DNA of 64,000 nt, from contig NC_091284.1 of the NCBI RefSeq assembly GCF_032444005.1, positions 37,386,001-37,450,000 on the forward strand. The letters are read 5' to 3'. How positions within the stretch are numbered: position 1 is the first letter of the stretch; every line of letters begins with the position of its first letter. Made by a program: the position numbers and the translations under genes. Below are positions 18,664 to 49,700 of this stretch, one piece after another. The notes beneath the pieces were generated by a model. That model did no database searches. It was not told the origin of the DNA and saw nothing but the letters and a program-made list of their open reading frames with translations. Source of the stretch: Ranitomeya imitator (Eukaryota).

Positions 18664-19750
18664 GTCAGGACCAGAAGGTCTGGGCGCCGCAGGCTCTGTC
18701 CAGCCACTGACTAGGGTGGCTCAGACCTGTAGTGCCATCAGCTGGAGTAATCAGTTCCCTACCTAGGCCAATTGGACAGCACCACACCCTATAAAAGGCT
18801 CCCAGTTCCCTGCTGGAACCTGCCAGTTATTGTTCTGCTTGCCTGGTTCACACAGCCGGATTTCAGCTCCTGGGCTCTAGTGGATTTTTCCTATTTATGA
18901 CCTTTTTTGCAGACCATTCTGTTGTCTGACGCTTTGTACTTTGCCCTCCTGGTTCTGACTAAGCAGCCGACCTGGTGGCACCAGCCCTGGGGTCCCTGGA
19001 TCAGTCCAGACTCCTGTACAGGTTTTAAAGCGTGAAGGCCAAGGCAACCCCTCTCATCTGGTAAATAGAAGGTCTAGAGCATATATACTGTCGTCCATAT
19101 CATGAGTTTGAGACTATTAATACCAGAAGATTGTGGTCGGTACAAGGACACTTTTTATACATGAGATCTTCTGTGCAACGAAGGATGAACGTCTATTACA
19201 TACTTGGAAAGGGCGTTATACTTTTAGCCTTGTAGATTGTGATCTGAGAAGGCCAAAGAACATTTTTATTGGGTCCGTTCCAAAATAGCAGACCAAGTAG
19301 GGCCCGAGGTATTAAGATCGGCTTTGTTCATGTCAGTATTAATGAAGGCAGCGATGAAGATGCCTAATTCACTAAGAGCAGCTCGCCACTTAAAGGAAAC
19401 CTGTCACCAGGTTTGGCCGCTCTTATTCTCTCCTGAATGCTTAAGAACGTTACATTCCACAAATTATAATTTCATTAGATTTAATATGATTAGATTTTAG
19501 CCAGGGCCAGATGATGACGACTTTGGCTTCGACAGCCGTCATGCTAGCACAGTTCGAAGTGTACTGGTTCCACTGCTACATCGCAGTTCTATAGCAGTGA
19601 ACGGGGTCACATTGTGGCATCTAAACTACTGCTACAAATACGAAATGAAGCCAAGTTTGATTTTTGGGAATTTTTTAACAGTAGTGACCCCAGTGGCACC
19701 AAGTGAACTTCGGCTTTTGCGGCCAAAGTTGCTGTGTAGCTCTAGCCTTA

Positions 19751-20067
19751 GGCTACGTTCACATTTGTGTTGTTGGGCGCAGCGTCGTCGACGCAACCAA
19801 CAACGCATATACACAACGCTGCGTTTTTTGACGCATGCGTTGACATAAACTAGTAACGCTCATGAATTTTGGCGCAGGGAAAACGCTACAAGCAGCATCG
19901 TCCGCACCCTGTCTGGTGCGTCAAATTGACGCATGCGTCGTAAAACGCAATACAACGCATACCGGCGCATGTCCATGCGCCCCCCATGTTAAAGATAGGG
20001 GCGCATGACGCATGCGTTGGTATGCATCGACGACGCTGCGCCCAACAACGCAAATGTGAACGTAGCC
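19751..20067. mobile_element. PIF/Harbinger-type MITE (TIR GGCTACGTTCACATTTG), TSD TTA; copy-A specific
   Basis: TTA at 19748-19750 and 20068-20070; the empty site CTAGCCTTAATTAG is present in copy B (~32905). Confidence 0.92.
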
Positions 20068-20489
20068 TTAATTAGTCTTCAGAAGAGGAGACAGAGGTGC
20101 TGGTGACTGAGCCAGAAGGCCATCTTTGTGTGGACTTGACACTGAACAGCTTGCACTGTATTTTAATACATGCAAACAGAAGACAAAACAGTTAAAAGTT
20201 TATAATTAAAATCAATTGTTTTAATCACAAAATTATGTAAAATGCGCTTAATAAAACATGCAAAGGTGTTTAACTATAACTGTATGGGGAAAAGTGCAGT
20301 GTTTGGTTGAAATGTGTTTTTCAGCTCCAATTTCAAATAAAATATACTAATAAGTAGATAAAGACAAGATTTTGGAATTATTCAGAATAAAAAAAAAAAT
20401 TATGATAGGTACTAGGGGTGTTGGCTACTACTAAAAAAATTAAAAAAAAAAAAATACGCCCCTGGCAGAACTAAAATGAAAAAGACTTG

Positions 20490-20538
20490 AATACACTAAT
20501 AGATCACAGACTGCACATCAGTCAACAGCGTGATGCAG

Positions 20539-20573
<35 letters not shown>

Positions 20574-22003
20574 GCAAACAGTTCTAGGATGTATTAACAG
20601 AAGCATAAAGTCTAGATCAGGGATCTCAAACATGTCAAGGAGCCCCCCGTGATATTGCGGCCCAGTCCTGAAGACTGCCGAAGTCAGAGTTTATTTTTCA
20701 ACTGAATGTGCGTCAGCTCTCTGCGCCGCAATACCAATATTAGTCACCGGCCAATTAGTGGCCTGTAGCTGACGTCAGGAAGTCGGCACGGGCAACGTGT
20801 GACGTCACTGCTGTGCACCACCCAGGCTGCTGTGGAGGACAGGGTGCAGTTCGCTGAGGGAGTAGAGGTCAGGGGAGAAGGATTTTTTTTTTGTAATGTG
20901 TATGTTAAGTGTGACAGAATTGGGGAAATTACTATACAATGGTGAACAGGTTGGGCTCATTACTACAAGATGTAGACCAGGAAGGGGGAAATGACTACAA
21001 GATGTTGGTCAAAATTACTATATGGTGCGAATTGTAAAAATAAAAAAATAAAAAAAATCACTGTATATGGCCAATTAGGGGGCAAAAAAAGAAAAATTGT
21101 AAAACAAAAGTTCAAAATAAAGTATGAAAATGTGTTTTGGACACTAAAAATGCTGTTTTATCTATACACTAAAGTAAACAAAAATAATGCACATTTGTCA
21201 TCGCCGCACTCTTAACGACCCAACAATAAAACTGTACCATAGACCAGGGGGTGTCAAACTGCATTCCTCGAGGGCTGCAAACAGGTCATGTTTTCAGGAT
21301 TTCCTTGTACTGCACAGGTGATCATTTAATCACCTACACACATAATGATTGCAGCACCTTATGCAATGCTAAGGAAATCTTGAAAACACGCATGGTTTGC
21401 GGCCCTCGAGGAATGCAGTTTGACAACCCTGCCATAGACCATACGATAAATGCCATTTAAAAGAATAAAAAAAAAATAAAAAAAAAATGTTTTTTTAAAA
21501 AAAAAAAATTATTCCCCTCTACTCCTCTTTGGTTAGGCGTCATCTGGAATACTGTGTCCAGTTCCGGGCACATTTTAAAAAAGGACGTTGAAAAACAGGA
21601 GCAAATTCAGAGAAGAGTGACCAGGATGGTGAGCAGACTGCAAACTATGCCCTACGAGGAACGGTTAAAGGATCTGGGAATGTTTTGCTTGCAAAAAAAG
21701 GCGAAGAGGAGACTTAATAGCTGTCTACAAATATCTGAAGGGCTGTCACAGTGTAGCGGGATCATCATTATTCTCATTTGCACATGGAAACACGAGAAGC
21801 AATGGGATGAAACTGAATGGGAGAAGATAAAGATTAGAAAAAATGTTTTGACAGTGAGGGCGATCAATGAGTGGAACAGGCTGTCACGAGAGGTGGTGAG
21901 TTCTCCTTCAATGGAAGTCTTCACACAGAGGCTGGATAGACATCTGCCTGAGATGGTTTAGTGAATCCTGCACGGAGCAGGGGGTTGGACATGATGACTG
22001 TGG
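20490..22003 (+). mobile_element. CR1 LINE 3' end, interrupted by a hAT-like element (~20619-21510)
   Basis: Degenerate CR1 RT C-terminal text (EYCVQF..HFKKDVEKQEQIQRRVTRMV..L..MPYEERLKDLGMF, RAINEWNRLSREVVSSPSMEVFTQRLD) and a CR1-type 3' UTR. Duplicated in copy B at ~33330-33437 and ~38740-39237. Confidence 0.8.
21245..21431. mobile_element. hAT-type MITE (TIR CAGGGGGTGTCAAACTGC), 8-bp TSD; copy-A specific
   Basis: TSD CCATAGAC at 21237-21244 and 21432-21439; a single CCATAGCC at the matching site in copy B (~38682). Confidence 0.88.
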
Positions 22004-23014
22004 AGCAGGGCCGGCTTCAGGTTTTCGTGGGCCCTGAGCGAAAGAGTGTCAGTGGGCCCCTTTAGCACACACACCGCAATTCATGATGCACAGATACGGC
22101 AGAGATAAATATAAGTATAGCACAATGCCAAAGATTTCACTTACATTACATGAGTGACATCAATAGCTCAGAATGTGGACAGTATAGTGCTCCATACAGT
22201 ATTATGGGCACCACATAGTCCTCCATACAGAATAATGAGCCCCGTAAAAGTATATGATGAGCCCTCGCTGGAAGAAGAAACCAGGAGACCTTGGGGCTTT
22301 AGGACACAGGCAGCAGTATGGATAAGTGCCGAAGGTTCCATTAGGGGAGAATGTTTTTTTTTTTAACTTTAGCAGCACCAGGGGCCTATTTTTAATCCTT
22401 GGTGGACAACCTATTTACTTAGAAGAATTGCATTTTTTGTGGCCTAAGGGTTTTTCTTAATTTGGTAAAGATCAACGTTGATTTATGAATTATTGTTGAT
22501 CTTTACCAAATAAAGAAAAACCCCTTAGGCCACAAAAATGCAATTCTTCTAAGTAAATAGGTGAGTAGTCGTATGTGACTAGTCTGTAGGAGCGCTTAGG
22601 TCCTTATAGAGAGAACCATACAGGTGGCTCTAGGACAAATTGTTTTGGGTGACTGTTTATAGCACGACTGAATTTTACATACTGAGGCAATTCCTGCATC
22701 TTTCTGTGGTGACAGTGGGACAATCCACAACCACCCAACAGTTGACCTGAACGAATGAGACTTAAGGAATAGGAATCAGTCTTTGGTTCCTTCAGGATCA
22801 TATTGGAGTGATATCTTCGATGCTACAACTGTACAAGACCAGGAAAGAAAACCAGACACTTTAGGTAAAGTCATTGTTTATTTTTAAGTGCAAAACGACA
22901 TTTTACATGAGACAAAGAAAGGTCACCATATCAATGAGTGCGAATCTTAAGGCCAAGAGCTAATATAAGGGCATCGCGGCTTAGGAATTACACCGAATCA
23001 GAGGAATTTTACAT

Positions 23015-25643
23015 TTACCAGGTGACGGCTTTCTTTTCTATTACCATCTCCCCATTAGGCGAATCCACTGAAGTAGGGAGAAGAGCCAAGAAAACTGGGG
23101 TAATGGCACCTTCATCCGGGGACTTGGTGGCATTAGGACCTGCCATATCAGTCCTCACCCACCCCGGGCAGCAGGCATTGAGAAGAATGCCCTCCCCTTT
23201 CCTAGTCTCCTTTATTTGCCGTGCGTGAATTCTGGACAACACTGTCACCCCGACTTTGGACACCCCATAAGAAGTGTTTGGCCAGCCATTTTTTTCATGG
23301 ACTCCATTTTTGGCATCTTCCACAAACTTCTCCATCAGTTTCGTCAACTCGTCCTCCGTGATGGTGTCACTGCGGAATTTCTCCTGAAGTTCGGGGCTGC
23401 ACTTCGCGAGAGCGGAGACGCTGACCATACTGGATACATTGACGACTCTTCCTGTACGAGAAAAATACATGACGTCCACTCCAAAGAAGTAAAGCTAAGT
23501 CGGACCCCTTACGAAATAAAAAGATAGACAGACAATCTCCTTCAAGGAGGTCACTAGTAACGTGCCAACCACCGAGAAGGGAGAGGAGAATCTCTACAGT
23601 GGCAGCGAGTTATTCTACTGAAACAAAGTCATCGGTGGAGTTTTACGATTAAAGTAGATTAGTTTAATCAATTTCCATTTGAAAACTTTTTTTTATGTGA
23701 TTGAACCCCTTAAATAAACCCCCCCCACCATCGATGTGTACTTACCGTTTGGTTTAATAATTGGAAGAAGCTCTCTAGAAACATCTTGTGTGCCAAAGAA
23801 GTTGGTCTTCAGAGTGACTTCTGCTTGGGTAGCAAATGGGGCCGTGTCAGCAACTGGAAAAAGAGGTCACGTTACTGACGTAATAGGAATGAACGGAGAA
23901 TAAGTGAGCATGTGTGACGAATCTTCTACCAAGGAAATGGGGGGCAAGGCTGAGCCCCTGGCCTAGGGATCAGAGGGTGTCCGAACAACCAAGATATTCA
24001 TGGCACATGAAGTCGAACTTGTTAACCCATAAAAGAGGACAATCAATAAACGTCAGCTTACTTAGTAGGTGATAACTTCCTGCTACCGAGGAACCGGCCA
24101 CAAAAATGCTCATTTTCAGTGGGAAGACGGCCTCATGTGCGCTAAGTACAACGCTCAGCTATATCTAACAGATATATAGATTGCCTTGTGCAGGCGTGTA
24201 CTATGGAGGACAGAGAATGAACTTCAATCCAATATTGCAGCCAGCATGCAGCCAGCGGGTAAGGAAAGGGTGAATCAAACACCCGAAAACCCCGCCCCTA
24301 TGGCTGAAAATTGTTCCCTCCAAATTCAGGTGACAGAGTCCCTTTAACCCTTTCAATAACTCCCCCCTCTTCAGTGCCCACTTTTGTGCCAGTTTTAATC
24401 TTTTTTTTTGTAGCCATTTATATGTGTATTCACATCAGGGTGCCTCGCTGTATTGTATTTTATTATTGTGTTTTTTTTTTTTTGTTTTTTTTTTTACTTT
24501 TGTTGTTAAACCTGTAAAAAAATAAAATAAATCAAAAATTGCTGAATAAGAAACTAAGTTCAGCAGTGTCTTTTTTGAGTGTCCGTAAACCAAAAAGGAA
24601 GCCGGATGCATTATTTCTTACTCCAGCCAGTCATTGTGACTTATTATTTTTACGGCTCAGGGTAAATATCCCGATGTTAGAAACTAACAAAAGTAGATTA
24701 AAAGGGTGAAAAATGCACCAAAATCATCATGGACGTCCATGGAGAAGAAGAAGCATCACTGCATAATTCGGCATAACATGCCCTTCAGGAGACTGGGAAA
24801 GCGGAGTGACATTCGGAATCACTCACATTTAGTGAGACCCTTATATACAGTGTGCAAAATTCAGAGAAAAAAAAAAAAATACAATAAACAGAAACCCTTC
24901 ATAATAAAAAAAAAAAAAGTAGGAAAATAAAACTAGACATACAGGTCATACAGGTCAAAGGGAAAAGCAAACTCAGCATGACTGTGCATTTATGGCGCTG
25001 CAGAAGCGAGCGGAGACTGGTACAAGCTGCTTTACCCTGCAGAGTACTACAACCCCCAGCATGAAGATGATAAAAGCACTACAATATGTGATTATTATAA
25101 AGGGGGCTCCCTGCTGCGGACAATCCCTTGACTGCAATAAACTATATGCGGATTATTCTGCAGCGGAGACCCCCATAGATCACCTGTGATCCCCAGCGAT
25201 CAATGAAGGAACCCAGTAGCCAAGTGTTCATTCCCCTACAGCGCCACCACAGGAAAGATGAAGTATTACACCATTCTCATTTAAATCAATGTGAAATATA
25301 TGGACATGGTGGGTCCCAAAATTGCCCTCTAAGGACCTGCCGCCCCAGTAGACGTACCTTTAAATGCGATTCCGGCATTATTGACCAGCACATCCAATCC
25401 GCCATACTTTTCCTTTAAGAAATCCCGCAGGGTCCGGATACTGGACAGGTCATTAATGTCCAGCTGATGGAAGTGCGGGGACAAGCCCTCTGTAGTTAGG
25501 TCCTTGACGGCTTCTTCTCCAAGTTTGGGGTCCCTGGCTGTCAGATACACGTCTCCCTGGAATTGTTTGCACAGGGCCCTGACCACAGCCAGTCCCACAC
25601 CTTTATTACCGCCTGTGACTACTGCGACTCGCACTCCGGCCAT
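23015..25643 (-). CDS. CBR1: Carbonyl reductase [NADPH] 1-like, copy A; exons 25643-25358, 23853-23746, 23451-23015; 276 aa
   Basis: Exons of 286+108+437 = 831 nt with GT-AG introns. TGGNKGVG, LTARD, NNAG, VSS and YGVSK SDR motifs. ACCPGWVRTDMAG matches CBR1, not CBR3 (PGPVKTDMDG). Adjacent to SETD4 as in human chr21. Confidence 0.95.
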
Positions 25644-25805
25644 GCTGACAGCTCTATGTGCAGAAGAAGAGGGAAGGAAGCAAATATGAGGTGCAGACAC
25701 AGACAGAACCTCTTGTTACTGGAGGAACTGGTGCAAAAAAAGCAGCTGAGCTCCTCCCTGCAAGGACTGAGAGCTGCCCCCTGCTCATAGACCTGTGTGA
25801 CCCTG

Positions 25806-25819
25806 CTGCCATCTAGTGG
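25806..25819 (-). promoter_or_regulatory. Candidate CTCF site upstream of CBR1 copy A (copy B at 43035-43048)
   Basis: CTGCCATCTAGTGG (reverse CCACTAGATGGCAG) matches the CTCF core consensus; ~165 bp upstream of the ATG. Confidence 0.5.
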
Positions 25820-26831
25820 GCAGAAAGGAGCACTACACCGCTGCATTACATAACACTTATTACAGCGCCACGGTCACACCTTCAGTCTTTTACAACAGAG
25901 GAAAAGTATCATAGAAACACATCAACATTTCTGCATTCCTGATTTTGGCTTACAAATACTGATGTAAAATGCTGACCAAATACTGAACGTGTCCTAAGAT
26001 CTGTTTTTTTTTCTCGGAAGTGAAAAAAAAAAACTAAACAACCCGTCCAATTTCCATCAAGGTTTTGGATCAGATTTCCATCGCTGCTTGTTGTCCGTAT
26101 GTGAGTTTTTACCATCAGTATTTTAGCACTTTTTCTTCTAGGCTAAAAAAATAAATAAAAATGGACGGATGTTTTTCAATCTTCTTGCAAAGGGTTATTG
26201 AAAAATGGACGGCACTTGGATGCAACTAGGAGACCATCAATGAGCTGAGGGAGGTTTTCATGGACCTGTAAGCGTGAATGGATGAGTTTAGTTCATAAAT
26301 CGGGTCAAAAGTCGACACGTCTCCGTTTTGCAAAAACAAAAGAACAGATAGGAGACCGTGACATTGACCGTGATCAGTGCGTGCTGGAAAAAAATGGATA
26401 GTTCAAGTATGAGAAGGATGGATGTCTACCATTCATCGGGATTTTCTCGACATTCTAGGTAAAATTGCAAAGTGCTTGTAAGAACAAATAACTTTGCAAT
26501 GTACTTGGTTGTTTAGGTTACTGACCACCTCTGAAGCTAATCAGCGGTGGCCAGTCTCCAAGGCAAGGAGCACAGCGCTAACAAGCTGTTTCCAATATAG
26601 AGCTTGTAAGTGCTGCTCTGATGCCGACTGTATCCGTACAGCCTCGGTGTCCCTGAACTGTCTTAGTCTTGGAGTGAGAAAGTGTCTAAAATGCACCGTG
26701 CGCACATGCCCTAAAGAGATTTTTAGGTTTCGGAAAACCAATGCATTTTTTTTTAAAGAAAAAAAAAGGGTATTTACTCACCCTCCCCAGGTCCGGGGCT
26801 GAGTCTCCACTGATGGTCCTGGTATCAGTAA

Positions 26832-27161
26832 GGGTATGTGCACACGATGCGGAAAACGCTGCGGAGCAATTTCCCATGAGTTTACAGTTCAATGTAAAGC
26901 TATGGGAAACCAAAAACGCTGTGCACATGCTGCGGAAAAAAACGCAGTGGTTTACATTCCGCAGAAAGGTCACTTCTTTCTGCGGATTCCGCAGCGGTTT
27001 TACAGCTGCTCCTATGGAAAACCGCAGTTGTAAAACCGCAGTGAAATCCGCAGAAAAACCGCGGTAAATCCGCCGCAAAAATGCAGCGTTTTTGCCCTGC
27101 AGAGTTATCAAATCAGCTGCGGAAAAATCCGCAGTGGCCAAGAATACGTGTGCACATAGCC
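26832..27161. mobile_element. PIF/Harbinger-type MITE (TIR GGGTATGTGCACACG), TSD TAA; present in both duplicates (copy B 44052-44392)
   Basis: TAA flanks on both sides; internal GCGG/CCGC inverted repeats. Confidence 0.85.
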
Positions 27162-28279
27162 TAATTGTCTGCAGCACTGACGTCATCTAGGCCATTGTCA
27201 GACACAGAGAGAAAAGAGGCCCTGTGCAAGAACAATGTATGGGCCAGGTCCAAGGGCTCGCCATAATGCAACATTCCACGTTTGGGATGTGGCCCCCTTA
27301 CCTTTTGGGCCCCTGTTACACCAATGTTATGCCTGTCCGTGCTGCAGACAATCAGTGAGCGGTTTGTGTAGTCAACATGGGCAGAGCGGCTGAGCTTAGT
27401 GATTGTCTGAAGTGCTGTCGTCAATGACAGGCACCAGGAGCAGTGGCAAAGACTCAGCGCCGGACCTGGGGAGAATGAATAAGGCAAACACACATTGTTT
27501 TTTTTTTTTTTTTAATAAACTGCAGCTGTGCATTTGTAAAAGTAGAAAACCCCTTTAATAGACCTTTTTTCCCCCATAGATTCCATGGGAAGCTTCAAAA
27601 GCTCATGCAAAATAGTAAATTGTGTTTTTACGTGCAGAAACACGGGATTTCTCTCCAAATAAAAGATGCATTAGAAAAAGTCGTCAAATCTGAGAAAAAA
27701 AAGTGAAAAAGCATAAAATAAATCAGTGCGGATTGTGCATTCTGGTGTTTATATGTGGGAAAAACGCAGCGTTTCCGCTACGTGTGAACACGGACTACGT
27801 GGCTTTCCAACATGGGGGTCGTTCTGGTTCCTTTTTTCTGCAGTCGCTGTGGCTGAGGACTGGGGCCCGAGTCTCTGACATAAATGCTGGATAAAATTGC
27901 GCTGTTTTACGAGGTAAAATGGCGCCACCACATTTTTCTGTTTCTATAACTGGACAGACAAAACCTAAGATCAGATTTGAATGATGCCGCCGTCACTAAA
28001 TGCGTTTCCAAAAATGTCACCTTGCAGTTATTCCTCACCTACACTCATTTTTGGTAAATTACCTCATATAGCGCTACATAACACCCCACCATTTTTGAGG
28101 ATGTTTTTGCACTAGGTACCACTTCTAAGTCACAGTCCACATTATAAAAGCATTCCCACATTTCATTAATGGTATATTTGACTAGCATACAGCATACAGA
28201 GCAGCTAACAATGCCGTCTGACAACAAAATGTGTCATATTTTCTACATACGCCACTTCATGCCGTTGTGAGAACTAGAC

Positions 28280-31340: not shown

Positions 31341-31431
31341 ACGGCTCTGTTACATAAACATCCCCTCATTCAGCACCATGACAATCAAGCACAGCAGAGT
31401 CCTGCATAGTGCATACACTGAGGCCACTGAT

Positions 31432-38004: not shown

Positions 38005-40248
38005 GTTTGTAAGGTCAAAGTAACACAGCCAAAATATGCTAGAGAACATATAGGGCAGATGGGAGGGGTACACCTGTTGTCGAGGGCTTAAATAGGGTTG
38101 TTAATGATGGTTTAAATGATTTGCAGGCCTGAAAACCGTTAAATGTCCATTTTGTGATGGTGCGTGTCAAAAACGCAATACGGATCACATACGGATTACA
38201 CACGGACCAGTACATGCGCAAAATACGCGACCACACCTAGGCTACGCAAGAACTACGGAAAGAGATTACGGAGACATTTTGGCGTATTACGCGCGTACAA
38301 TACGTTCCGTAATGTCTTACGCCGAGTGTGACGCCGGCCTAAGTGTGACAGAATTGGGGAAATTACTATATAATGGTGAACAGGTTGGGTTCATTACTAC
38401 AAGATGGAGACCAGGAAGGGGGAAATGACTACAAGATGTTGGTCAGAATTACTATATGGTGCTAATTGTAAAAAGAAAAAAAATTATTAAAAATAAGAAA
38501 ATCACTGTATATGGCCAATTAGGGGGTAAAAAAAAGAAAAATTGTAAAACAAAAGTTCAAAATAAAGTATGAAAATGTGTTTTGGACACTAAAAATGCTG
38601 TTTTATCTATACACTAAAGTAAACAAAAATAATGCACATTTGTCATCGCCGCACACTTAACGACCCAACGATAAAACTGTGCCATAGCCCATACGATGAA
38701 TGCCATTTAAAAGAATAAAAAAAGAAAAAGAAAAAAAAAATCCCCCTTTACTCCTCCTTGGTCAGTTCTCATCTGGAATACTGTGTCCAGTTCTGGGCAT
38801 ATTTTAAAAAAAGACTTTGAAAAACAGGAGCAAATTCAGAGAAGAGTGACCAGGATGGTGAGCAGACTGCAAACTATGTCCTACGAGGAACGTGTAAAGG
38901 ATCTGGGAATGTTTTGCTTGCAAAAAAAGAAGGCGAAGAGGAGACTTAATAGCTGTCTACAAATATCTGAAGCGATGTCACAGTGTAGAGGGATCATCAT
39001 TATTCTCATTTGCACATGGAAACACGAGAAGCAATGGGATGAAACTGAAAGGGAGAAGACAAAGATTAGAAAAAATGTTTTGACAGTGAGTGCAATCAAT
39101 GAGTGGAACAGGCTGTCACGAGAGGTGGTGAGTTCTCCTTCAATGGAAGTCTTCACACAGAGGCTGGATAGACATCTGCCTGAGATGGTTTAGTGAATCC
39201 TGCACGGAGCAGGGGGTTGGACATGATGACTGTGGAGCAGGGCCGGCTTCAGGTTTTCGTGGGCCCTGAGCGAAAGAGTCTCAGTGGGCCCCTTTAGCAC
39301 ACACACACCACAATTCATGATGCACAGATACGGCAGAGATAAATATAAGTATAGCACAATGCCAAAGATTTCACTTACATTACATGAGTGACATCAATAG
39401 CTCAGAATGTGGACAGTATAGTGCTCCATACAGTATTATGGGCACCACATAGTCCTCCATACAGAATAATGAGCCCCGTAAAAGTATATGATGAGCCCTC
39501 GCTGGAAGAAGAAACCAGGAGACCTTGGGGCTTTAGGACACAGGCAGCAGTATGGATAAGTGCCGAAGGTTCCATTAGGGGAGAATGTTTTTTTTTTTAA
39601 CTTTAGCAGCACCAGGGGCCTATTTTTAATCCTTGGTGGACAACCTATTTACTTAGAAGAATTGCATTTTTTGTGGCCTAAGGGTTTTTCTTAATTTGGT
39701 AAAGATCAACGTTGATTTATGAATTATTGTTGATCTTTACCAAATAAAGAAAAACCCCTTAGGCCACAAAAATGCAATTCTTCTAAGTAAATAGGTGAGT
39801 AGTCGTATGTGACTAGTCTGTAGGAGCGCTTAGGTCCTTATAGAGAGAACCATACAGGTGGCTCTAGGACAAATTGTTTTGGGTGACTGTTTATAGCACG
39901 ACTGAATTTTACATACTGAGGCAATTCCTGCATCTTTCTGTGGTGACAGTGGGACAATCCACAACCACCCAACAGTTGACCTGAACGAATGAGACTTAAG
40001 GAATAGGAATCAGTCTTTGGTTCCTTCAGGATCATATTGGAGTGATATCTTCGATGCTACAACTGTACAAGATCAGGAAAGAAAACCAGACATACTAGGT
40101 AAAGTCAATGTTTATTTTTAAGTGCAAAACGACATTTTACATGAGACAAAGAAAGGTCACCATATCAATGAGCGAGAATCTTAAGGCCAAGAGCTAATAT
40201 AAGGGCATCGCGGCTTAGGAATTACACCGAATCACAGGAATTTTACAT

Positions 40249-42872
40249 TTACCAGGTGACGGCTTTCTTTTCTATTACCATCTCCCCATTAGGCGAATCC
40301 ACTGAAGTAGGGAGAAGAGCCAAGAATACTGGGGTAATGGCACCTTCATCCGGGGACTTGGTGGCATTAGGACCTGCCATATCAGTCCTCACCCACCCCG
40401 GGCAGCAGGCATTGAGAAGAATGCCCTCCCCTTTCCTAGTCTCCTTTATTTGCCGTGCGTGAATTCTGGACAACACTGTCACCCCGACTTTGGACACCCC
40501 ATAAGAAGTGTTTGGCCAGCCATTTTTTTCATGGACTCCATTTTTGGCATCTTCCACAAACTTCTCCATCAGTTTCGTCAACTCGTCCTCCGTGATGGTG
40601 TCACTGCGGAATTTCTCCTGAAGTTCGGGGCTGCACTTCGCGAGAGCGGAGACGCTGACCATACTGGATACATTGACGACTCTTCCTGTACGAGAAAAAT
40701 ACATGACGTGCACTCCAAAGAAGTAAAGCTAAGTCGGACCCCTTACGGAATAAAAAGATAGACAGACAATCTCCTTCAAGGAGGTCACTAGTAACGTGCC
40801 AACCACCGAGAAGGGAGAGGAGAATCTCTACAGTGGCAGCGAGTTATTCTACTGAAACAAAGTCATCGGTGGAGTTTTACGATTAAAGTAGATTAGTTTA
40901 ATCAATTTCCATTTGAAAACTTTTTTTTATGTGATTGAACCCCTTAAATAAACCCCCCCACCATCGATGTGTACTTACCGTTTGGTTTAATAATTGGAAG
41001 AAGCTCTCTAGAAACATCTTGTGTGCCAAAGAAGTTGGTCTTCAGAGTGACTTCTGCTTGGGTAGCAAATGGGGCCGTGTCAGCAACTGGAAAAAGAGGT
41101 CACGTTACTGACGTAATAGGAATGAACGGAGAATAAGTGAGCATGTGTGACGAATCTTCTACCAGAGAAATGGGGGGCAAGGCTAAGCCCCTGGCCTAGG
41201 GATCAGAGGGTGTCCGAACAATCAAGATATTCATGGCACATGAAGTCGAACTTGTTAACCCATAAAAGAGGACAATCAATAAACGTCAGCTTACTTAGTA
41301 GGTGATAACTTCCTGCTACCGAGGAACCGGCCACAAAAATGCTCATTTTCAGTGGGAAGACGGCCTCATGTGCGCTAAGTACAACGCTCAGCTATATCTA
41401 ACAGATATATAGATTGCCTTGTGCAGGCGTGTACTATGGAGGACAGAGAATGAACTTCAATCCAATATTGCAGCCAGCATGCAGCCAGCGGGTAAGGAAA
41501 GGGTGAATCAAACACCCGAAAACCCCGCCCCTATGGCTGAAAATTGTTCCCTCCAAATTCAGGTGACAGAGTCCCTTTAACCCTTTCAATAACTCCCCCC
41601 TCTTCAGTGCCCACTTTTGTGCCAGTTTTAATCTTTTTTTTTGTAGCCATTTATATGTGTATTCACATCAGGGTGCCTCGCTGTATTGTATTTTATTATT
41701 GTGTTTTTTTTTTTTTTTTTGTTTGTTTTTTTACTTTTGTTGTTAAACCTGTAAAAAAATAAAATAAATCAAAAATTGCTGAATAAGAAACTAAGTTCAG
41801 CAGTGTCTTTTTTGAGTGTCCGTAAACCAAAAAGGAAGCCGGATGCATTATTTCTTACTCCAGCCAGTCATTGTGACTTATTATTTTTACGGCTCAGGGT
41901 AAATATCCCGATGTTAGAAACTAACAAAAGTAGATTAAAAGGGTGAAAAATGCACCAAAATCATCATGGACGTCCATGGAGAAGAAGAAGCATCACTGCA
42001 TAATTCGGCATAACATGCCCTTCAGGAGACTGGGAAAGCGGAGTGACATTCGGAATCACTCACATTTAGTGAGACCCTTATATACAGTGTGCAAAATTCA
42101 GAGAAAAAAAAAAAAAATACAATAAACAGAAACCCTTCATAATAAAAAAAAAAAAAGTAGGAAAATAAAACTAGACATACAGGTCATAGGGAAAAGCAAA
42201 CTCAGCATGACTGTGCATTTATGGCGCTGCAGAAGCGAGCGGAGACTGGTACAAGCTGCTTTACCCTGCAGAGTACTACAACCCCCAGCATGAAGATGAT
42301 AAAAGCACTACAATATGTGATTATTATAAAGGGGGCTCCCTGCTGCGGACAATCCCTTGACTGCAATAAACTGTATGCGGATTATTCTGCAGCGGAGACC
42401 CCCATAGATCACCTGTGATCCCCAGCGATCAATGAAGGAACCCAGTAGCCAAGTGTTCATTCCCCTACAGCGCCACCACAGGAAAGATGAAGTATTACAC
42501 CATTCTCATTTAAATCAATGTGAAATATATGGACATGGTGGGTCCCAAAATTGCCCTCTAAGGACCTGCCGCCCCAGTAGACGTACCTTTAAATGCGATT
42601 CCGGCATTATTGACCAGCACATCCAATCCGCCATACTTTTCCTTTAAGAAATCCCGCAGGGTCCGGATACTGGACAGGTCATTAATGTCCAGCTGATGGA
42701 AGTGCGGGGACAAGCCCTCTGTAGTTAGGTCCTTGACGGCTTCTTCTCCAAGTTTGGGGTCCCTGGCTGTCAGATACACGTCTCCCTGGAATTGTTTGCA
42801 CAGGGCCCTGACCACAGCCAGTCCCACACCTTTATTACCGCCTGTGACTACTGCGACTCGCACTCCGGCCAT
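40249..42872 (-). CDS. CBR1: Carbonyl reductase [NADPH] 1-like, copy B; exons 42872-42587, 41086-40979, 40685-40249; 276 aa
   Basis: Same exon sizes and splice sites as copy A; the only coding difference I noticed is a synonymous GTT/GTA (Val) in exon 3. Confidence 0.95.
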
Positions 42873-45529
42873 GCTGACAGCTCTATGTGCAGAAGAAGAG
42901 GGAAGGAAGCAAATATGAGGTGCAGACACAGACAGAACCTCTTGTTACTGGAGGAACTGGTGCAAAAAAAGCAGCTGAGCTCCTCCCTGCAAGGACTGAG
43001 AGCTGCCCCCTGCTCATAGACCTGTGTGACCCTGCTGCCATCTAGTGGGCAGAAAGGAGCACTACACCGCTGCATTACATAACACTTATTACAGAGCCAC
43101 GGTCACACCTTCAGTCTTTTACAACAGAGGAAAAGTATCATAGAAACACATCAACATTTCTGCATTCCTGGTTTTGGCTTACAAATACTGATGTAAAATG
43201 CTGACCAAATACTGAACGTGTCCTAAGATCTGTTTTTTTTTCTCGGAAGTGAAAAAAAAAAACTAGACAACCCGTCCAATTTCCATCAAGGTTTTGGATC
43301 AGATTTCCATCGCTGCTTGTTGTCCGTATGTGAGTTTTTACCATCAGTATTTTAGCACTTTTTCTTCTAGGCTAAAAAAATAAATAAAAATGGACAGATG
43401 TTTTTCAATCTTCTTGCAAAGGGTTATTGAAAAAAATGGATGCAACTAGGAGACCATCAATGAGCTGAGGGAGGTTTTCATGGACCTGTAAGCGTGAATG
43501 GATGAGTTTAGTTCATAAATCGGGTCAAAAGTGGACACGTCTCCGTTTTGCAAAAACAAAAGAACAGATAGGAGACCGTGACATTGACCGTGATCAGTGC
43601 GTGCTGGAAAAAAATGGATAGTTCAAGTATGAGAAGGATGGATGTCTACCATTCATCGGGATTTTCTCGACATTCTAGGTAAAATTGCAAAGTGCTTGTA
43701 AGAACAAATAACTTTGCAATGTACTTGGTTGTTTAGGTTACTGACCACCTCTGAAGCTAATCAGCGGTGGCCAGTCTCCAAGGCAAGGAGCACAGCGCTA
43801 ACAAGCTGTTTCCAATATAGAGCTTGTAAGTGCTGCTCTGATGCCGACTGTATCCGTACAGCCTCGGTGTCCCTGAACTGTCTTAGTCTTGGAGTGAGAA
43901 AGTGTCTAAAATGCACCGTGCGCACATGCCCTAAAGAGATTTTTAGGTTTCGGAAAACCAATGCATTTTTTTTTAAAGAAAAAAAAAGGGTATTTACTCA
44001 CCCTCCCCAGGTCCGGGGCTGAGTCTCCACTGATGGTCCTGGTATCAGTAAGGGTATGTGCACACGATGCGGAAAACGCTGCGGAGCAATTTCCCATGAG
44101 TTTACAGTTCAATGTAAAGCTATGGGAAACCAAAAACGCTGTGCACATGCTGCGGAAAAAAACGCAGCGGTTTACATTCCGCAGAAAGGTCACTTCTTTC
44201 TGCGGATTCCGCAGCGGTTTTACAGCTGCTCCTATGGAAAACCGCAGTTGTAAAACCGCAGTGAAATCCGCAGAAAAACCGCGGTAAATCCGCGATAAAT
44301 CTGCCGCAAAAATGCAGCGTTTTTGCCCTGCAGAGTTATCAAATCAGCTGCGGAAAAATCCGCAGTGGCCAAGAATACGTGTGCACATAGCCTAATTGTC
44401 TGCAGCACTGACGTCATCTAGGCCATTGTCAGACACAGAGAGAAAAGGGGCCCTGTGCAAGAACAATGTATGGGCCAGGTCCAAGGGCTCGCCATAATGC
44501 AACATTCCACGTTTGGGATGTGGCCCCCTTACCTTTTGGGCCCCTGTTACACCAATGTTATGCCTGTCCGTGCTGCAGACAATCAGTGAGCGGTTTGTGT
44601 AGTCAACATGGGCAGAGCGGCTGAGCTTAGTGATTGTCTGAAGTGCTGTCGTCAATGACAGGCACCAGGAGCAGTGGCAAAGACTCAGCGCCGGACCTGG
44701 GGAGAATGAATAAGGCAAACACACATTGTTTTTTTTTTTTAATAAACTGCAGCTGTGCATTTGTAAAAGTAGAAAACCCCTTTAATAGACCTTTTTTCCC
44801 CCATAGATTCCATGGGAAGCTTCAAAAGCTCATGCAAAATAGTAAATTGTGTTTTTACGTGCAGAAACACGGGATTTCTCTCCAAATAAAAGATGCATTA
44901 GAAAAAGTTGTCAAATCTGAGATAAAAAAAAAAGTGAAAAAGCATAAAATAAATCAGTGCGGATTGTGCATTCTGGTGTTTATATGTGGGAAAAAACGCA
45001 GCGTTTCCGCTATGTGTGAACACGGACTACGTGGCTTTCCAACATGGGGGTCGTTCTGGTTCCTTTTTTCTGCAGTCGCTGTGGCCGGGTCCACGTCTGC
45101 GCTGAGGACTGGGGCCCGAGTCTCCGTCACAGATTCTGACAGAAATGCTGGATAAAATTGTGCTGTTTTACGAGGTAAAATGGCGCCACCACATTTTTCT
45201 GTTTCTATAACTGGACAGACAAAACCTAAGATCAGATTTGAATGATGCCGCCGTCATTAAATGCGTTTCCAAAAATGTCACCTTGTAGTTATTTTTCACC
45301 TACACTCATTTTTGGTAAATTACCTCATATATCACTACATAACACCCCACCATTTTTGAGGATGTTTTTGCACTAGGTACCACTTCTAAGTCACAGTCCA
45401 CATTATAAAAGCATTCCCACATTTCATTAATGGTATATTTGACTAGCATACAGAGCAGCTAACAATGCCGTCTGACAACAAAATGTGTCATATTTTCTAC
45501 ATACGCCACCTCATGCCGTTGTGAGAACT

Positions 45530-45735
45530 AGACGCTGGCAAGATGGCGCCCGTAAACAGCGGACATACTGAAAAGAACAGGGGCACACAAGCTTTCACAC
45601 TTGTAACTCTTTGTCGGTGACGTCATACAGCGTTATCCAATGAGACATCTCGGCGGAAGAGGCAGACCCGGAAGTGAAGGGTGTGTCTCCCCACGTGGAG
45701 TCCTTACCTTCAGATTGCAGCGGATGTAAGCTTTG
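45530..45735 (+). promoter_or_regulatory. SETD4 promoter and putative non-coding exon 1 (copy B, native)
   Basis: YY1-like CAAGATGGCG ~45539, CRE 45618-45625, CCAAT, ETS CCGGAAGT 45668-45675, donor-like GTAAGC ~45726. Confidence 0.6.
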
Positions 45736-46772
45736 TTTCTTGCATTAATGTCCTGCCATGTTCTTGTGTTGTGTAAATAAGATAGTGACCACAGCTGAGG
45801 ATTTGTTACTTTGTTACAGTCTGTAGATAATCAGCCTGGAATACAAAATAATGCGTTTGCTGCAGAAAACTGAATACATTGAGACAGAGTGCAGCTGTGT
45901 AAGCAGGACTGGGGTCACAGGTGTGATTACAGGGGGTGCATGAGATAGAGGGGGCTTGGAGCAATGGTGGGTGGTGCTGTCCATGTGCCAAACTGAGCGC
46001 ACGTACCAGCGCAAGTGAATGACTGGCCCGTTCATGTCATGCCAATCCTAAGGGCTAATTCACATTTGTCACATCCGTATTTACCTGCGGACACGACTGG
46101 ACCTGTGTCTGTAACATGGGCGACCGTGTGTGAATTTTTCCCAAAGCCGGGTTCTGACAGCCGTGTGAAAAATTGTCAATTTTTTTTATATCCAGAAAAA
46201 AATATTCAACTTTTGATCTGTATCGTGCCGTACATCCATTTTTCACCTATTTTTGGTATTTTGTTTTTATACAGTCTCCATTCTTAAAAAAAAAAAGGTG
46301 GGCCGCTGTGTAAAATGCAATGACTTGGAAATCTTATCGCCATATTTTATTCACAGCAGAACGTAGATTGGAAGGTGAACGTTGGACATCTTTTCCATTT
46401 CGTTTGAAAAAAATAAATCCTTTAGAGATTGATGGCGGCGACACGTCTGAAACGTTGATACAGGGTTGACAGAAGGCTGAATATGTAAGTGGTACTAATG
46501 AAAAAGAGCAGGAAGGTCCATCTTCACCTAAGTCACAGACTGTATAAAATGAGCTTGTTAGAGAGGCAGAGTCTCCCAGAAGCAAAGATGGTCAGAGGTA
46601 ACTGATCTGTGCACGACTGCGTCTGGACATAGCCCCCCCAAAAATGGTGTATATGGGGACTTGGCAAAGGCCAAATCTATAAACAGGGCTGCGGACTTCT
46701 GCACATGGGACATAAGCTGATATTTGTCTTCTGCATTTTAATAAAGGCGCAAAGAAGTATGAAGACTGAAAA

Positions 46773-49700
46773 ATGAATCCTAAACGAGGGCGAACGGGCA
46801 GACGGAGGAAGAAAAAGGTTCTAGGAACATCCACAGGTAAGCGATGCTTATGTAGAAAGACCCCATTCCTGGCCAATGGGGGAAGTACAGACTAATTCCC
46901 CCTACACCGACTGGTGACCTGTCCGTAATAAGTCACCTGTGTAGTCATACTGGTGTCTGAGTCCAGATCCTACAGGGGAACACAAAGCCCACGAGGCTCA
47001 GATCAAGTGTGAACCGAACTGAACAGGGAACTATCGAAAGCCCTTGTAGAGTACTTACGCCCCATGTACCCCTTTATCAAGTAGCAAGGTCATCAGTGAT
47101 GCCATATAATGTACTTCCTCCACAAGTGCCCCCTTATCAAGTACTTTGCCCTCAGTGCCCCCCCATATAAAGTAATAATGACCCTTGTGGCCCCTTATTA
47201 AATACTTCTGCCCCAAGTTCCCCCTTATCAAGTAATAGTGCTGCTAGAGCCCCTTATGATGGGATAATGGCCAGGTGCCCCCTTATGATGGGATAATGCC
47301 CGAGTGCCCCCTTATGATGCGATAATGCCCGAGTGCCCCCTTTTGATATGATAATGCCCGAGTGCCCCCTTTTGATGCGATAATGCCCGAGTGCCCCCTT
47401 TTGATGTGATAATGTCCGAGTGCCCCCTTATGATGCGGTAATGGCTCGAGTGCCCCCTTATGATACTATAATGGCCCGAGTGCCCCCTTATGATGCGGTA
47501 ATGGCTCGAGTGCCCCCTTATGATACTATAATGGCCCGAGTGCCCTCTTATGATGTCATAATGGTCGGGTGCCTCCTTATGATGGGATAATGCCCGAGTG
47601 CCCCCTTATGATGGGATAATGCCCGAGTGCCCCCTTATGATGGGATAATGCCCGAGTGCCCCCTTATGATGGGATAATGCCCGAGTGCCCCCTTATGATG
47701 GGATAATGCCCGAGTGCCCCCTTTTGATGCGATAATGCCCGAGTGCCCCCTTTTGATGCGATAATGCCCGAGTGCCCCCTTTTGATGCGATAATGCCCGA
47801 GTGCCCCCTTTTGATGCGATAATGCCCGAGTGCCCCCTTATGATGCGATAATGTCCCGAGTGCCCCCTTATGATGCGGTAATGGCCCGAGTGCCCCCTTA
47901 TGATACTATAATGGCCCGAGTGCCCTCTTATGATGTCATAATGGCCGGGTGCCTCCTTATGATGGGGTAATGCCTGAGTGCCCCCTTATGATGGGATAAT
48001 GCCCGAGTGCCCCCTTATGATACTATAATGGCCCGAGTGCCCCCTTTTGATGTGATAATGTCCGAGTGCCCCCTTATGATGCGATAATGGCCCGAGTGCC
48101 CCCTTATGATGCGGTAATGGCTCAAGTGCCCCCCTTATGATACTATAATGGCCCGAGTGCCCCCTTATGATGCGATAATGGCCCGAGTGCCCCCTTATGA
48201 TGCGGTAATGGCTCGAGTGCCCCCTTATGATACTATAATGGCCCGAGTGCCCTCTTATGATGTCATAATGGTCGGGTGCCTCCTTATGATGGGATAATGC
48301 CCGAGTGCCCCCTTATGATGGGATAATGCCCGAGTGCCCCCTTATGATGGGATAATGCCCGAGTGCCCCCTTATGATGGGATAATGCCCGAGTGCCCCCT
48401 TATGATGGGATAATGCCCGAGTGCCCCCTTATGATGGGATAATGCCCGAGTGCCCCCTTATGATGGGATAATGCCCGAGTGCCCCCTTATGATGGGATAA
48501 TGCCCGAGTGCCCCCTTATGATGGGATAATGCCCGAGTGCCCCCTTATGATGGGATAATGCCCGAGTGCCCCCTTATGATGGGATAATGCCCGAGTGCCC
48601 CCTTATGATGGGATAATGCCCGAGTGCCCCCTTATGATGGGATAATGCCCGAGTGCCCCCTTATGATACTATAATGGCCCGAGTGCCCCCTTATGATGCG
48701 GTAATGGCTCGAGTGCCCCCTTATGATGGGATAATGCTCGAGTGCCCCCTTATGATGCGATAATGCAGAGTGCCCCCTTATGATGCGATAATCGCTCGAG
48801 TGCCCCCTTATGATGCGATAATGCAGAGTGCCCCCTTATGATGCGATAATCGCTCGAGTGCCCCCTTATGATGCGATAATGCAGAGTGCCCCCTTATGGT
48901 GCGATAATGCTCGAGTGCCCCCTTATGATGCGATAATGCAGAGTGCCCCCTTATGATGTGATAATGCTCGAGTGCCCCCTTATGATTTATAATTATAATT
49001 TAAATCAGACCACCTTTATTTATCTCAAATAATAAAATGTAAAAAATAAAACCGCATATTCTATATTGCTACGCATGTAATTGTTTTATTCCAAAGTGTG
49101 AATGCTGAAAAAAATCAGAATAGCAGAATATCAAAATATTTTTTTATTTACGTAATTAAAAAAGAAATGAAAAATAATCAAAAAGTCATCTAGAACCTAA
49201 AATGGTATCAATAAAAACTACAGCCGGCACAGGTAAACACAAGCCCAATGTCTGTGAATAAAAAAGTTATGGCTCTGATAATATGGGGAAGGTTTTATCA
49301 TTTTTTTTTTATGTAGTAAAACATAAAGACCCTATAGAAATGTGGTATCACCAAAACCATAGTGTTATTTGTTCTGCACAGTGAAAGTGGTAAAGACAAA
49401 ACCCAAAAGACAACTGCAAAATTGCATATTTTCTTGTTTGTTTTTTTTTTTTTTTACACTATTTTTATGTTACCTTTAGGGAACCCGAGTCATGAAAGGC
49501 AGTACGTCCGGCTGATGAGGTGGATGAAGGAGAGAGGGTTTCGGGACAAGCGACTGAGGACGGCACATTTTCCAGGTAAAAATTAAGAAGATAATAAACA
49601 TAAGCCGACATATTGGAGTGGAGGTCCTTTGTGTGCCACTGATCTACCCCAAATGATGGCGGTGCCCAGAGAGCTACTTGCCACCCAATTAGTCACAGGG

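What the first reader, a model, noticed from the sequence alone, without database searches (positions are those of the whole stretch)
19676..47296. Recent 13-14.5 kb tandem duplication of CBR1 with a resolvable TAA microhomology breakpoint
Seen: copy A starts TAACAGTAGTGACC (19676). The junction reads GGGATAACATTAGTGACC (32834-32851), joining the first unit of the SETD4-intron minisatellite to that start through a shared TAA, with no N-gap. Inference: a microhomology-mediated duplication (MMBIR/FoSTeS-like) seeded at a minisatellite edge doubled CBR1 dosage.
Basis: partly seen in the sequence, partly recalled or inferred. Interest (0 to 1): 0.7.

Follow-up and report, generated by a model that had tools for sequence, protein, structure and literature searches.

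The report
Unfixed CBR1 tandem duplication in frog
One mimic poison frog assembly carries two head-to-tail copies of the detoxifying enzyme gene CBR1, but a second assembly and another animal's reads have only one, so the second copy is either an old, unfixed duplication or an assembly error.

Summary
Copy A (19676-32840) and copy B (32838-47296) lie head to tail. They meet at GGGATAA|CATTAG with a shared TAA and no N gap. Each copy holds an intact three-exon CBR1 gene.

"Recent" is not supported.
- Four transposon insertions separate the copies. The original unit was about 9.8 kb.
- The first ~2 kb differ by 4.5%, about 40% of the distance to Dendrobates tinctorius. The rest differ by 0.64%.
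- A and B are nowhere each other's closest relatives.

The duplication is not fixed. A second Ranitomeya imitator assembly (GCA_958301615.1) and contigs from another sample carry one copy. That copy is A-like at its start and B-like over the gene, with no junction. D. tinctorius and Phyllobates terribilis also look single-copy.

My best reading (about 0.5) is an older Ranitomeya-lineage duplication made by a non-homologous join. Gene conversion then homogenised most of it, and recombination between the copies can remove one. False joining of two haplotypes remains possible (about 0.25). No reads of the assembled animal covered the junction.

The scan has noted other tandem duplications elsewhere in this genome, but not this locus. 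This is an ordinary kind of event, of modest interest.

The parts
19676..32840 (.). Copy A of the duplicated unit (13,165 bp; about 9.8 kb without its three transposon insertions)
   Evidence: Self-BLAST and MAFFT alignment against copy B
32838..47296 (.). Copy B of the duplicated unit (14,459 bp; about 9.9 kb without the Harbinger element)
32838..32840 (.). Junction TAA, shared by the end of copy A and the start of copy B. The same TAA stands at 19676-19678 and at 47294-47296.
   Evidence: No homology beyond these 3 bp on either side.
23015..25643 (-). CBR1 copy A. Coding exons are 25643-25358, 23853-23746 and 23451-23015. The CDS is 831 nt with GT/AG splice sites.
   Evidence: Exons 1 and 3 each match human CBR1 (1WMA) best in the PDB. 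The 276-aa R. imitator protein P0001 matches exon 3 at 100%.
40249..42872 (-). CBR1 copy B. Coding exons are 42872-42587, 41086-40979 and 40685-40249. It encodes the same protein as copy A, with one synonymous difference (40327 versus 23093).
32317..32380 (+). SETD4 coding exon 1, the extra copy inside unit A (ATG at 32317, GT donor after 32380). It is separated from the rest of SETD4 by the whole of unit B.
   Evidence: The SETD4 CDS ranges annotated in three other assemblies all end at this homologous point (with mapping). Read directly.
46773..46836 (+). SETD4 coding exon 1, the copy contiguous with the gene. It lies 3.9 kb head-to-head from the CBR1-B start codon.
49480..49575 (+). SETD4 coding exon 2 (AG acceptor, GT donor, frame continues from exon 1). 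With exon 1 it places the minisatellite and the breakpoint inside SETD4 intron 1.
   Evidence: A later SETD4-like exon at 52981-53439 matches the SETD3/LSMT class of SET-domain enzymes in the PDB.
47125..48986 (.). Minisatellite in SETD4 intron 1: degenerate 30-bp units at 47125-47234, then 59 copies of a 29-bp unit at 47250-48986. Copy A keeps only its first part, at 32669-32840.
19751..20067 (.). 317-bp Harbinger-type MITE in copy A only (TSD TTA, 29/30 TIR). Also present in the single-copy haplotype L001 and in sample S1.
21245..21431 (.). 187-bp hAT-type MITE in copy A only (8-bp TSD CCATAGAC). Also present in L001.
29247..32028 (.). 2782-bp non-autonomous hAT element in copy A only (8-bp TSD GTAAGTGG). 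It carries a 30-bp minisatellite at 29683-31214. It is absent from copy B and from L001.
33767..38339 (.). 4573-bp autonomous Harbinger transposon in copy B only (TSD TAA; DDE_Tnp_4 and MADF reading frames). It is absent from copy A, L001 and S1.
32838..39100 (.). The deeply diverged start of copy B. Excluding the Harbinger element, it is about 4.5% from both copy A and L001 and lacks the two MITEs they share.

Best explanation
The most likely reading is a real tandem duplication that arose once in the Ranitomeya lineage.

The unit contains:
- all of CBR1;
- the 3.9-kb region between the divergently transcribed CBR1 and SETD4;
- SETD4 coding exon 1;
- 460 bp of SETD4 intron 1.

Shown:
- The two ends were joined without homology. 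Only TAA is shared, inside the proximal units of a 29-bp minisatellite.
- This is the signature of a microhomology or end-joining type event, not of unequal crossing-over between repeats.

Inferred:
- After the duplication, the first ~2 kb of the two units diverged to 4.5% and collected three transposon insertions.
- The remaining ~8 kb, including the gene, was kept about 99.4% alike by gene conversion or unequal exchange.
- With 8-10 kb of near-identical direct repeat, recombination between A and B readily removes one unit. The product must have an A-type start and a B-type end.
- The second assembly and sample S1 carry exactly such a single copy.

Both CBR1 copies are intact and encode the same protein, so carriers probably have extra CBR1 dosage. 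They also have a second upstream SETD4 promoter and first exon. Expression was not tested.
For: Structure and junction:
- Coordinates, homology and the 3-bp junction.
- No repeat or TIR at either breakpoint.
- Chance of 3 bp or more of microhomology is 0.05.

Genes:
- Intact gene models with one synonymous difference.
- CBR1 identity.
- SETD4 exon 1 lies inside the unit.

Divergence:
- Two strata, 72/1595 versus 52/8150 substitutions, 2dLL 112.6.
- Four insertions with clean TSDs.

The second R. imitator assembly (L001) is single-copy:
- One 12.5-kb alignment at 99.0% runs from the gene through 19676 into the left flank. The other side runs into the minisatellite and SETD4.
- L001 equals A at about 70 sites in the first 2 kb and shares both MITEs. 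It equals B at most sites over the gene.

Sample S1 contigs show the same picture:
- One contig joins 284 nt of left flank to the A-type start.
- A 735-nt contig runs from the unit end into the minisatellite.
- There is no B-start sequence.
- Depth inside the unit (7.9-15.4) is no higher than on the boundary-spanning contig (15.4).

Age of the B-start lineage:
- B-start is 0.037-0.047 from A and L001, while A versus L001 is 0/475. R. imitator versus D. tinctorius is 0.105-0.118.
- Derived changes fall on both branches (6 versus 10).
- B-start is thus 5-10 times deeper than ordinary allelic differences here, which fits a paralogue.

Outgroups:
- In D. tinctorius and P. terribilis the gene side continues directly into the left flank within the 10 kb fetched on that side.
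Against: - No read or contig independent of this assembly shows the junction. The only other well-covered sample and the only other assembly lack it.
- S1 and L001 share the same private variants (32533, 32779). They may be one animal and so count as one witness.
- In the 0.64% stratum A, B and L001 are related like three alleles (private sites A 38, B 17, L001 14). This needs conversion or exchange to be invoked.
- The junction sits at the edge of a 1.8-kb minisatellite, a place where assemblies fail.
- L001's switch from A-like to B-like falls at the very left edge of the high-identity zone. That is a mild coincidence for a simple single-crossover loss.
- B-start sequence has not been shown in any other Ranitomeya.
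Confidence: 0.5

Rival explanations
1. Assembly artefact. The sequenced frog is heterozygous for two single-copy haplotypes. One is A-type (two MITEs and the hAT element). The other is B-type (Harbinger element and a divergent start). The assembler laid them one after the other, so there is no duplication in any animal.
For: - The junction, and B-start next to it, are absent from the second assembly and from S1.
- A and B are never sister sequences. In the shallow stratum A, B and L001 look like three alleles.
- The first A/B mismatch is 5 nt inside copy B, and the junction is at a minisatellite edge.
- Any end-to-start joining of two haplotigs mimics a clean tandem duplication.
- Earlier notes of this scan list other unverified duplications and a palindrome in this assembly.
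Against: - There is no N gap at or near the junction.
- The join is a sharp 3-bp overlap with no duplicated flank. Overlap-based long-read assemblers do not create this without a read that contains it (inference).
- It needs an allele 3.7-4.7% diverged with three transposon differences in 2 kb, where other allelic comparisons at this locus give 0-0.9%.
Confidence: 0.25
2. A real but younger duplication made between the two homologous chromosomes of a frog that carried divergent haplotypes. Copy A descends from an L001-like haplotype. Copy B descends from a haplotype with an ancient or introgressed first 2 kb. The differences between the copies then pre-date the duplication, and single-copy haplotypes such as L001 are ancestral.
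For: - It explains why A and B are not sisters and why L001 matches A on the left and B over the gene, without conversion or secondary loss.
- The junction signature is as in the main explanation.
- Both outgroup species look single-copy.
Against: - It needs the same unusually deep allele as the artefact model.
- No single-copy B-start allele was seen in S1 or L001.
- Exchanges between homologues are, by general knowledge, rarer than exchanges between sister chromatids.
Confidence: 0.17
3. One reading: a recent duplication within one chromosome by MMBIR/FoSTeS, with all differences between the copies arising afterwards. These would include error-prone synthesis near the breakpoint.
For: - The 3-bp microhomology at the junction.
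- The most diverged stretch starts right at the junction.
- The coding sequences are nearly identical.
Against: - A single-copy haplotype (L001) shares with A two derived MITE insertions and about 70 base states that B lacks. It shares with B most states over the gene. This is impossible if A and B split after L001's lineage did.
- Against the D. tinctorius outgroup, derived changes lie on both branches (6 versus 10).
- Error-prone synthesis cannot remove MITEs cleanly.
Confidence: 0.04

Closest known systems
Non-recurrent tandem duplications or CNVs with microhomology junctions (FoSTeS/MMBIR or microhomology-mediated end joining), as described for human genomic disorders
   Same: Head-to-tail orientation. 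One novel junction with 3 bp of microhomology. No long repeat at either breakpoint. One breakpoint lies in a tandem-repeat tract that is hard to replicate.
   Different: There is no templated insertion or complex junction that would point specifically to template switching. The copies are not young and are not sister sequences. The junction is not yet confirmed outside one assembly.
Concerted evolution and gain/loss by NAHR in tandem gene pairs (for example globin or opsin arrays)
   Same: A long, nearly identical direct repeat beside a diverged edge. There is a single-copy haplotype with the outer halves of the two copies, as expected from recombination between them.
   Different: Conversion was inferred from divergence strata, not observed. 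Only three haplotypes were compared.
False heterotype (haplotype) duplications in genome assemblies
   Same: The two copies differ at roughly allelic level over most of their length. The second copy is absent from another assembly of the species.
   Different: There is no gap at the join, and it lies inside a contig of a long-read chromosome-level assembly. One segment is far more diverged than other allelic comparisons at the locus.
The vertebrate CBR1/CBR3 cluster next to SETD4 (human chromosome 21) and the multi-copy 'CBR1-like' arrays annotated in many anurans
   Same: The same neighbours and head-to-head arrangement with SETD4. Repeated tandem duplication of this gene is common: several CBR1-like proteins lie on one chromosome in Dendropsophus, Engystomops, Leptodactylus and Eleutherodactylus. 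An older decayed paralogue lies at 7507-16722.
   Different: This particular copy pair was seen only in one R. imitator assembly. The human arrangement is quoted from general knowledge, not tested here.

Membership tests
Microhomology-junction tandem duplication (MMEJ / FoSTeS / MMBIR class) | Direct head-to-tail copies with one novel junction | tested here: met
   Searches show collinear direct homology of 19676-32840 with 32838-47296.
Microhomology-junction tandem duplication (MMEJ / FoSTeS / MMBIR class) | 2-5 bp of microhomology and no extended homology at the breakpoints | tested here: met
   Exactly 3 bp (TAA) are shared. No similarity between the flanks. Chance expectation is 0.05.
Microhomology-junction tandem duplication (MMEJ / FoSTeS / MMBIR class) | Templated insertions or multiple template switches, which would single out FoSTeS/MMBIR | tested here: not met
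   The junction is simple, with no inserted bases. The replication-based mechanism therefore cannot be told from end joining.
Microhomology-junction tandem duplication (MMEJ / FoSTeS / MMBIR class) | Junction present in real molecules, independent of the assembly | tested here: inconclusive
   No contig of S1 (X1, X2) crosses 32838. X23 matches the assembly but leaves 32714-33218 uncovered. Reads of the assembled animal were not available.
NAHR-generated duplication | Homologous repeats at both breakpoints of the original event | tested here: not met
   Sequence 19400-19675 has no match near 47297 onwards, and the unit start is unique in the window.
Transposon-mediated duplication (alternative transposition) | Transposon termini or TIRs at the junction | tested here: not met
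   The Harbinger and hAT TIR motifs are not at 19676, 32838 or 47296. The nearest element (the MITE at 19751) is missing from copy B.
False haplotype duplication | Gap or contig end at the join | tested here: not met
   The only N runs are at 51927-52064 and 55155-55287.
False haplotype duplication | Half depth on each copy and no spanning reads in the assembled individual | not testable with these tools
   The single read-laying run returned only contigs from other samples.
False haplotype duplication | Second copy absent from other assemblies or individuals of the species | tested here: met
   L001 (GCA_958301615.1) and S1 are single-copy. This is equally expected for a polymorphic duplication.
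Carbonyl reductase 1 (classical SDR, CBR1/CBR3 group) | adh_short fold with the glycine-rich cofactor motif and the catalytic Tyr-x-x-x-Lys | tested here: met
   Pfam PF00106 matches exons 1 and 3. TGGNKGVG lies in exon 1 and YGVSK in exon 3.
Carbonyl reductase 1 (classical SDR, CBR1/CBR3 group) | Closer to CBR1 than to CBR3 | tested here: met
   Exon 3 scores 225 bits to human CBR1 and 171 bits to CBR3. Exon 1 scores 139 and 130 bits.
Carbonyl reductase 1 (classical SDR, CBR1/CBR3 group) | Carbonyl-reducing activity, and expression of both copies | not tested
   No RNA run was laid and no assay was done.

The most novel reading that the evidence does not exclude
A several-million-year-old CBR1 tandem pair persists in Ranitomeya as a gain/loss polymorphism. 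Its gene-bearing part is kept identical by conversion. Extra dosage of this xenobiotic carbonyl reductase, or the added upstream SETD4 promoter and first exon reading antisense across CBR1-B, is under selection in an alkaloid-sequestering frog.
Probability: 0.08. Interest if true: 0.55.

Novelty: new member of a known kind. Interest (0 to 1): 0.3.

Why it matters
If real, this is a clean natural example of three linked processes at one locus:
- a non-homologous join creates a gene pair;
- gene conversion keeps most of the pair identical;
- recombination between the copies removes one again.

The copy number of a drug- and toxin-metabolising enzyme would then vary between individuals of a chemically defended frog. 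The unit also duplicates the SETD4 promoter and first coding exon. That could add an alternative SETD4 transcript start reading antisense through one CBR1 copy.

If it is an artefact, it is a useful warning. A gapless, microhomology-like junction in a chromosome-level assembly is not proof of a duplication. Gene-gain counts from this assembly would need checking against reads.

Either way the kind of event is well known. The full-text search found no paper naming both carbonyl reductase and poison frogs.

Tried and rejected
Steps that led nowhere:
- Exact look-ups of exon-sized ORFs in public assemblies found nothing. The route that worked was the stop-to-stop 159-aa frame of exon 3. It reached full-length proteins and their loci.
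- Pfam gave no SET-domain hit for the SETD4-like exons. The PDB sequence search and the annotated CDS ranges in other assemblies settled that gene's identity instead.
- Literature searches for CBR1 tandem duplication and for carbonyl reductase in poison frogs gave nothing relevant.
- The 2020 R. imitator genome preprint reports 23% duplicated BUSCO genes, which its authors suspect are partly uncollapsed heterozygosity. That concerns a fragmented 77,639-contig assembly, not the chromosome-level record this window comes from, so I used it only as context.

Explanations I rejected:
- The unit start as a transposon end. The 22-mer at the start occurs only at the two copies.
- NAHR as the origin. 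There is no flank homology.
- Breakpoint-associated hypermutation as the cause of the diverged B start. B lacks two MITEs that A and L001 share, and the changes are symmetric against the outgroup.
- Short B-state pieces of about 32 letters in S1 and organism C at 32988-33003. I did not take them as evidence for copy B, because they have the same short length in two species and neighbouring sites show only A states.

Limits on what was run:
- I did not build or search a joined, spliced CBR1 model. Exons were searched separately by reference, and the full-length protein used (P0001) came from the database.
- The N runs were left untouched.


Full report
**Observation**

- Copy A begins TAACAGTAGTGACC at 19676.
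- The junction GGGATAACATTAGTGACC is at 32834-32851.
- Copy B ends GGGATAA at 47296 and runs on into a minisatellite.
- Self-BLAST shows collinear direct homology between 19676-32840 and 32838-47296.
- The only N runs in the window are at 51927-52064 and 55155-55287, far from the junction. I left them untouched.
- The left flank (...TTTTTTAA) and the unit end (...GGGATAA) share exactly TAA and nothing more.
- For a random blunt join, the chance of 3 bp or more of microhomology is about 0.05.
- The 22 bases that open the unit occur only at the two copies, and neither flank resembles the other. Neither a transposon end nor repeat-mediated crossing-over explains the join.

**Gene content**

Each unit carries a three-exon gene on the minus strand.
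- Copy A exons are 25643-25358, 23853-23746 and 23451-23015.
- Copy B exons are 42872-42587, 41086-40979 and 40685-40249.
- The CDS is 831 nt with canonical splice sites. The two copies differ by one synonymous base.
- Exons 1 and 3 match Pfam adh_short.
- Both exons score best against human CBR1 in the PDB, ahead of CBR3.
- The database holds a 276-aa carbonyl reductase of Ranitomeya imitator that is 100% identical to exon 3.
- I searched the exons separately by reference. I built no joined model.

- The SETD4 coding ranges annotated in three other assemblies all begin at the point homologous to window 46773 (mapping).
- The window there reads an ATG, 64 nt of open frame and a GT donor. The frame continues in an exon at 49480-49575.
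- The 29-bp minisatellite (47250-48986, with degenerate units from 47125) is therefore in SETD4 intron 1.
- The right breakpoint lies 460 bp into that intron.
- The duplication copies CBR1, the 3.9-kb head-to-head intergenic region and SETD4 exon 1. A spare SETD4 exon 1 sits at 32317-32380 in copy A.

**How alike the copies are**

Four insertions with clean target-site duplications separate the copies.

| Element | Position | Copy | Target-site duplication |
|---|---|---|---|
| 317-bp Harbinger-type MITE | 19751-20067 | A | TTA |
| 187-bp hAT-type MITE | 21245-21431 | A | 8 bp |
| 2782-bp hAT element | 29247-32028 | A | 8 bp |
| 4573-bp autonomous Harbinger | 33767-38339 | B | TAA |

- Without these insertions the units are 9812 and 9884 bp.
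- Substitutions fall into two strata with a change point near 21862. There are 72 in 1595 aligned sites (4.5%) to the left and 52 in 8150 (0.64%) to the right, with 2dLL 112.6.
- 'Recent' therefore does not describe the whole unit.

**Independent DNA: sequencing runs**

I laid four runs on 31300-34300.

Sample S1 (runs X1 and X2) carries the same organism label as X23, at word depth 8-15.
- A 385-nt contig joins 284 nt of non-matching sequence, taken to be the left flank, to the 75-bp unit start and then to the MITE.
- A 735-nt contig runs from 32114 to 32840 and 8 nt further, without branching. It carries the B-type base at 32779.
- Every contig over 32905-33767 carries copy A's states and lacks the Harbinger element.
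- No contig crosses 32838.
- Depth inside the unit (7.9-15.4) is no higher than on the boundary-spanning contig (15.4).
- S1 also has a homozygous G at 32533, where both assembly copies have C. It is therefore not the assembled animal.

X23 matches the assembly perfectly over 32352-32700 but leaves the junction uncovered. The tool warns that contigs show presence, not absence. The unbroken boundary contigs and the depths nevertheless point to a single copy in S1.

**Independent DNA: a second assembly**

The look-up of the R. imitator protein returned two loci.
- L002 is this window itself (GCA_032444005.1, CM064361.1), matching at 100%.
- L001 comes from a second R. imitator assembly, GCA_958301615.1.

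L001 is single-copy.
- The order is SETD4, minisatellite, a B-type unit end without the hAT element, a private 2.3-kb insertion, and the gene.
- One 12.5-kb alignment at 99.0% then passes straight through 19676 into the left flank.
- It has both MITEs and no Harbinger element.

L001 shares S1's variants at 32533 and 32779. The two may be the same animal and should be counted as one witness.

**Three-way comparison**

I aligned A, B and L001 and classed each variable site by which sequence differs.

| Site class | Count |
|---|---|
| B alone differs | 83 |
| A alone differs | 40 |
| L001 alone differs | 14 |

- From 19681 to about 21750 nearly every site has B as the odd one out.
- From about 21757 to 26948 A is usually the odd one out.
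- Further right the pattern is mixed.
- A and B are therefore nowhere each other's closest relatives. This excludes a simple recent duplication within one chromosome followed by mutation.
- It also excludes error-prone synthesis as the cause of the diverged B start, because B lacks two derived MITE insertions that A and L001 share.

**Outgroups**

- The loci of Dendrobates tinctorius and Phyllobates terribilis show SETD4 head-to-head with one CBR1. The gene side then continues directly into the homologue of the left flank. Both look single-copy within the 10 kb fetched on that side.
- R. imitator differs from D. tinctorius by 0.105-0.118 in three sampled segments.
- In the segment of the unit start that aligns with D. 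tinctorius (20074-20548), A versus B is 0.037 and A versus L001 is 0/475.
- The A/B differences there are derived on both branches, 6 and 10.
- The B-start lineage is thus roughly a third or more as old as the split between the two genera. It is 5-10 times deeper than the other allelic comparisons at this locus.

**Interpretation**

Three scenarios fit the data.

X. An old Ranitomeya-lineage duplication (my preferred reading, about 0.5).
- The edge next to the junction, broken up by transposon insertions, escaped homogenisation.
- The remaining 8 kb was kept alike by gene conversion.
- Single-copy chromosomes arise by recombination between A and B. They must then have an A-type start and a B-type end, as L001 and S1 do.
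- It explains the deep B start without needing an exceptional allele.

Y. A younger duplication between two homologous chromosomes carrying divergent haplotypes (about 0.17).

Z. No duplication at all: two haplotypes of the sequenced frog laid end to end by the assembler (about 0.25).
- For it: the allele-like relations in the shallow stratum, the minisatellite-edge junction and the lack of any independent junction read.
- Against it: the gapless 3-bp join inside a long-read contig and the depth of the B-start lineage.

The mechanism of the original join is a non-homologous, microhomology-type event. The simple junction does not distinguish FoSTeS/MMBIR from end joining.

**Context and value**

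- Tandem CBR1-like arrays are annotated in many frogs.
- An older, decayed CBR paralogue lies upstream in this window at 7507-16722. Duplication at this locus is recurrent and ordinary.
- The full-text search found no paper naming both carbonyl reductase and poison frogs.
- Earlier notes of this scan list other tandem duplications and a palindrome on other pieces of this genome. At least one of these the only deeply sequenced sample lacks. I did not test those notes beyond confirming the species name.
- Interest is modest: either a probably real but unfixed gene duplication of a known kind, or an instructive assembly error.

Noticed in passing
window 7507-16722, minus strand: A third, older CBR-family copy that looks decayed. 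Exon 1 (16722-16447, 70% identical) starts with Leu instead of Met and has a 3-residue deletion. Exon 2 lies at 12270-12163. Only the last 56 residues of exon 3 were found (7680-7507), so the catalytic Tyr-x-x-x-Lys part is missing. P. terribilis and Anomaloglossus have a second annotated CBR1-like protein at 76-77% identity that may be its intact orthologue.
   Followed up: partly
window 32317-32380 and 46773-46836: SETD4 coding exon 1 and its promoter side are duplicated with CBR1. Transcripts from the upstream copy would run antisense through the whole of CBR1-B before reaching SETD4 exon 2 at 49480.
   Followed up: partly
L001:6082-8382: The second R. imitator assembly has a private 2.3-kb insertion. 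It lies at the point homologous to window 27248/27250 (44479/44481 in copy B), upstream of CBR1. I did not classify it.
   Followed up: no
window 29683-31214: The hAT element specific to copy A carries its own 30-bp minisatellite of about 50 units. It is unrelated to the SETD4-intron array.
   Followed up: no
window 55589-57036 and 60677-61534: Two arrays of a 90-bp tandem repeat, about 94% alike, lie 3.6 kb apart in the SETD4 region.
   Followed up: no
window 58245-58973, plus strand: A Tc1/mariner transposase reading frame (HTH_Tnp_Tc3_2 and DDE_3) inside the SETD4 region.
   Followed up: no
window 32029-32208 and 33219-33420: These short stretches inside the unit are high-copy repeats. Word depths reach the thousands, up to about 100,000, in organism A and in a related organism C. 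Public-run contigs break there.
   Followed up: no
window 32352-32700 (run X23): A small run of unknown library type from another study matches the assembly without a single difference, including at 32533 where S1 differs. It may come from the assembled animal or its population, but it does not cover the junction.
   Followed up: no
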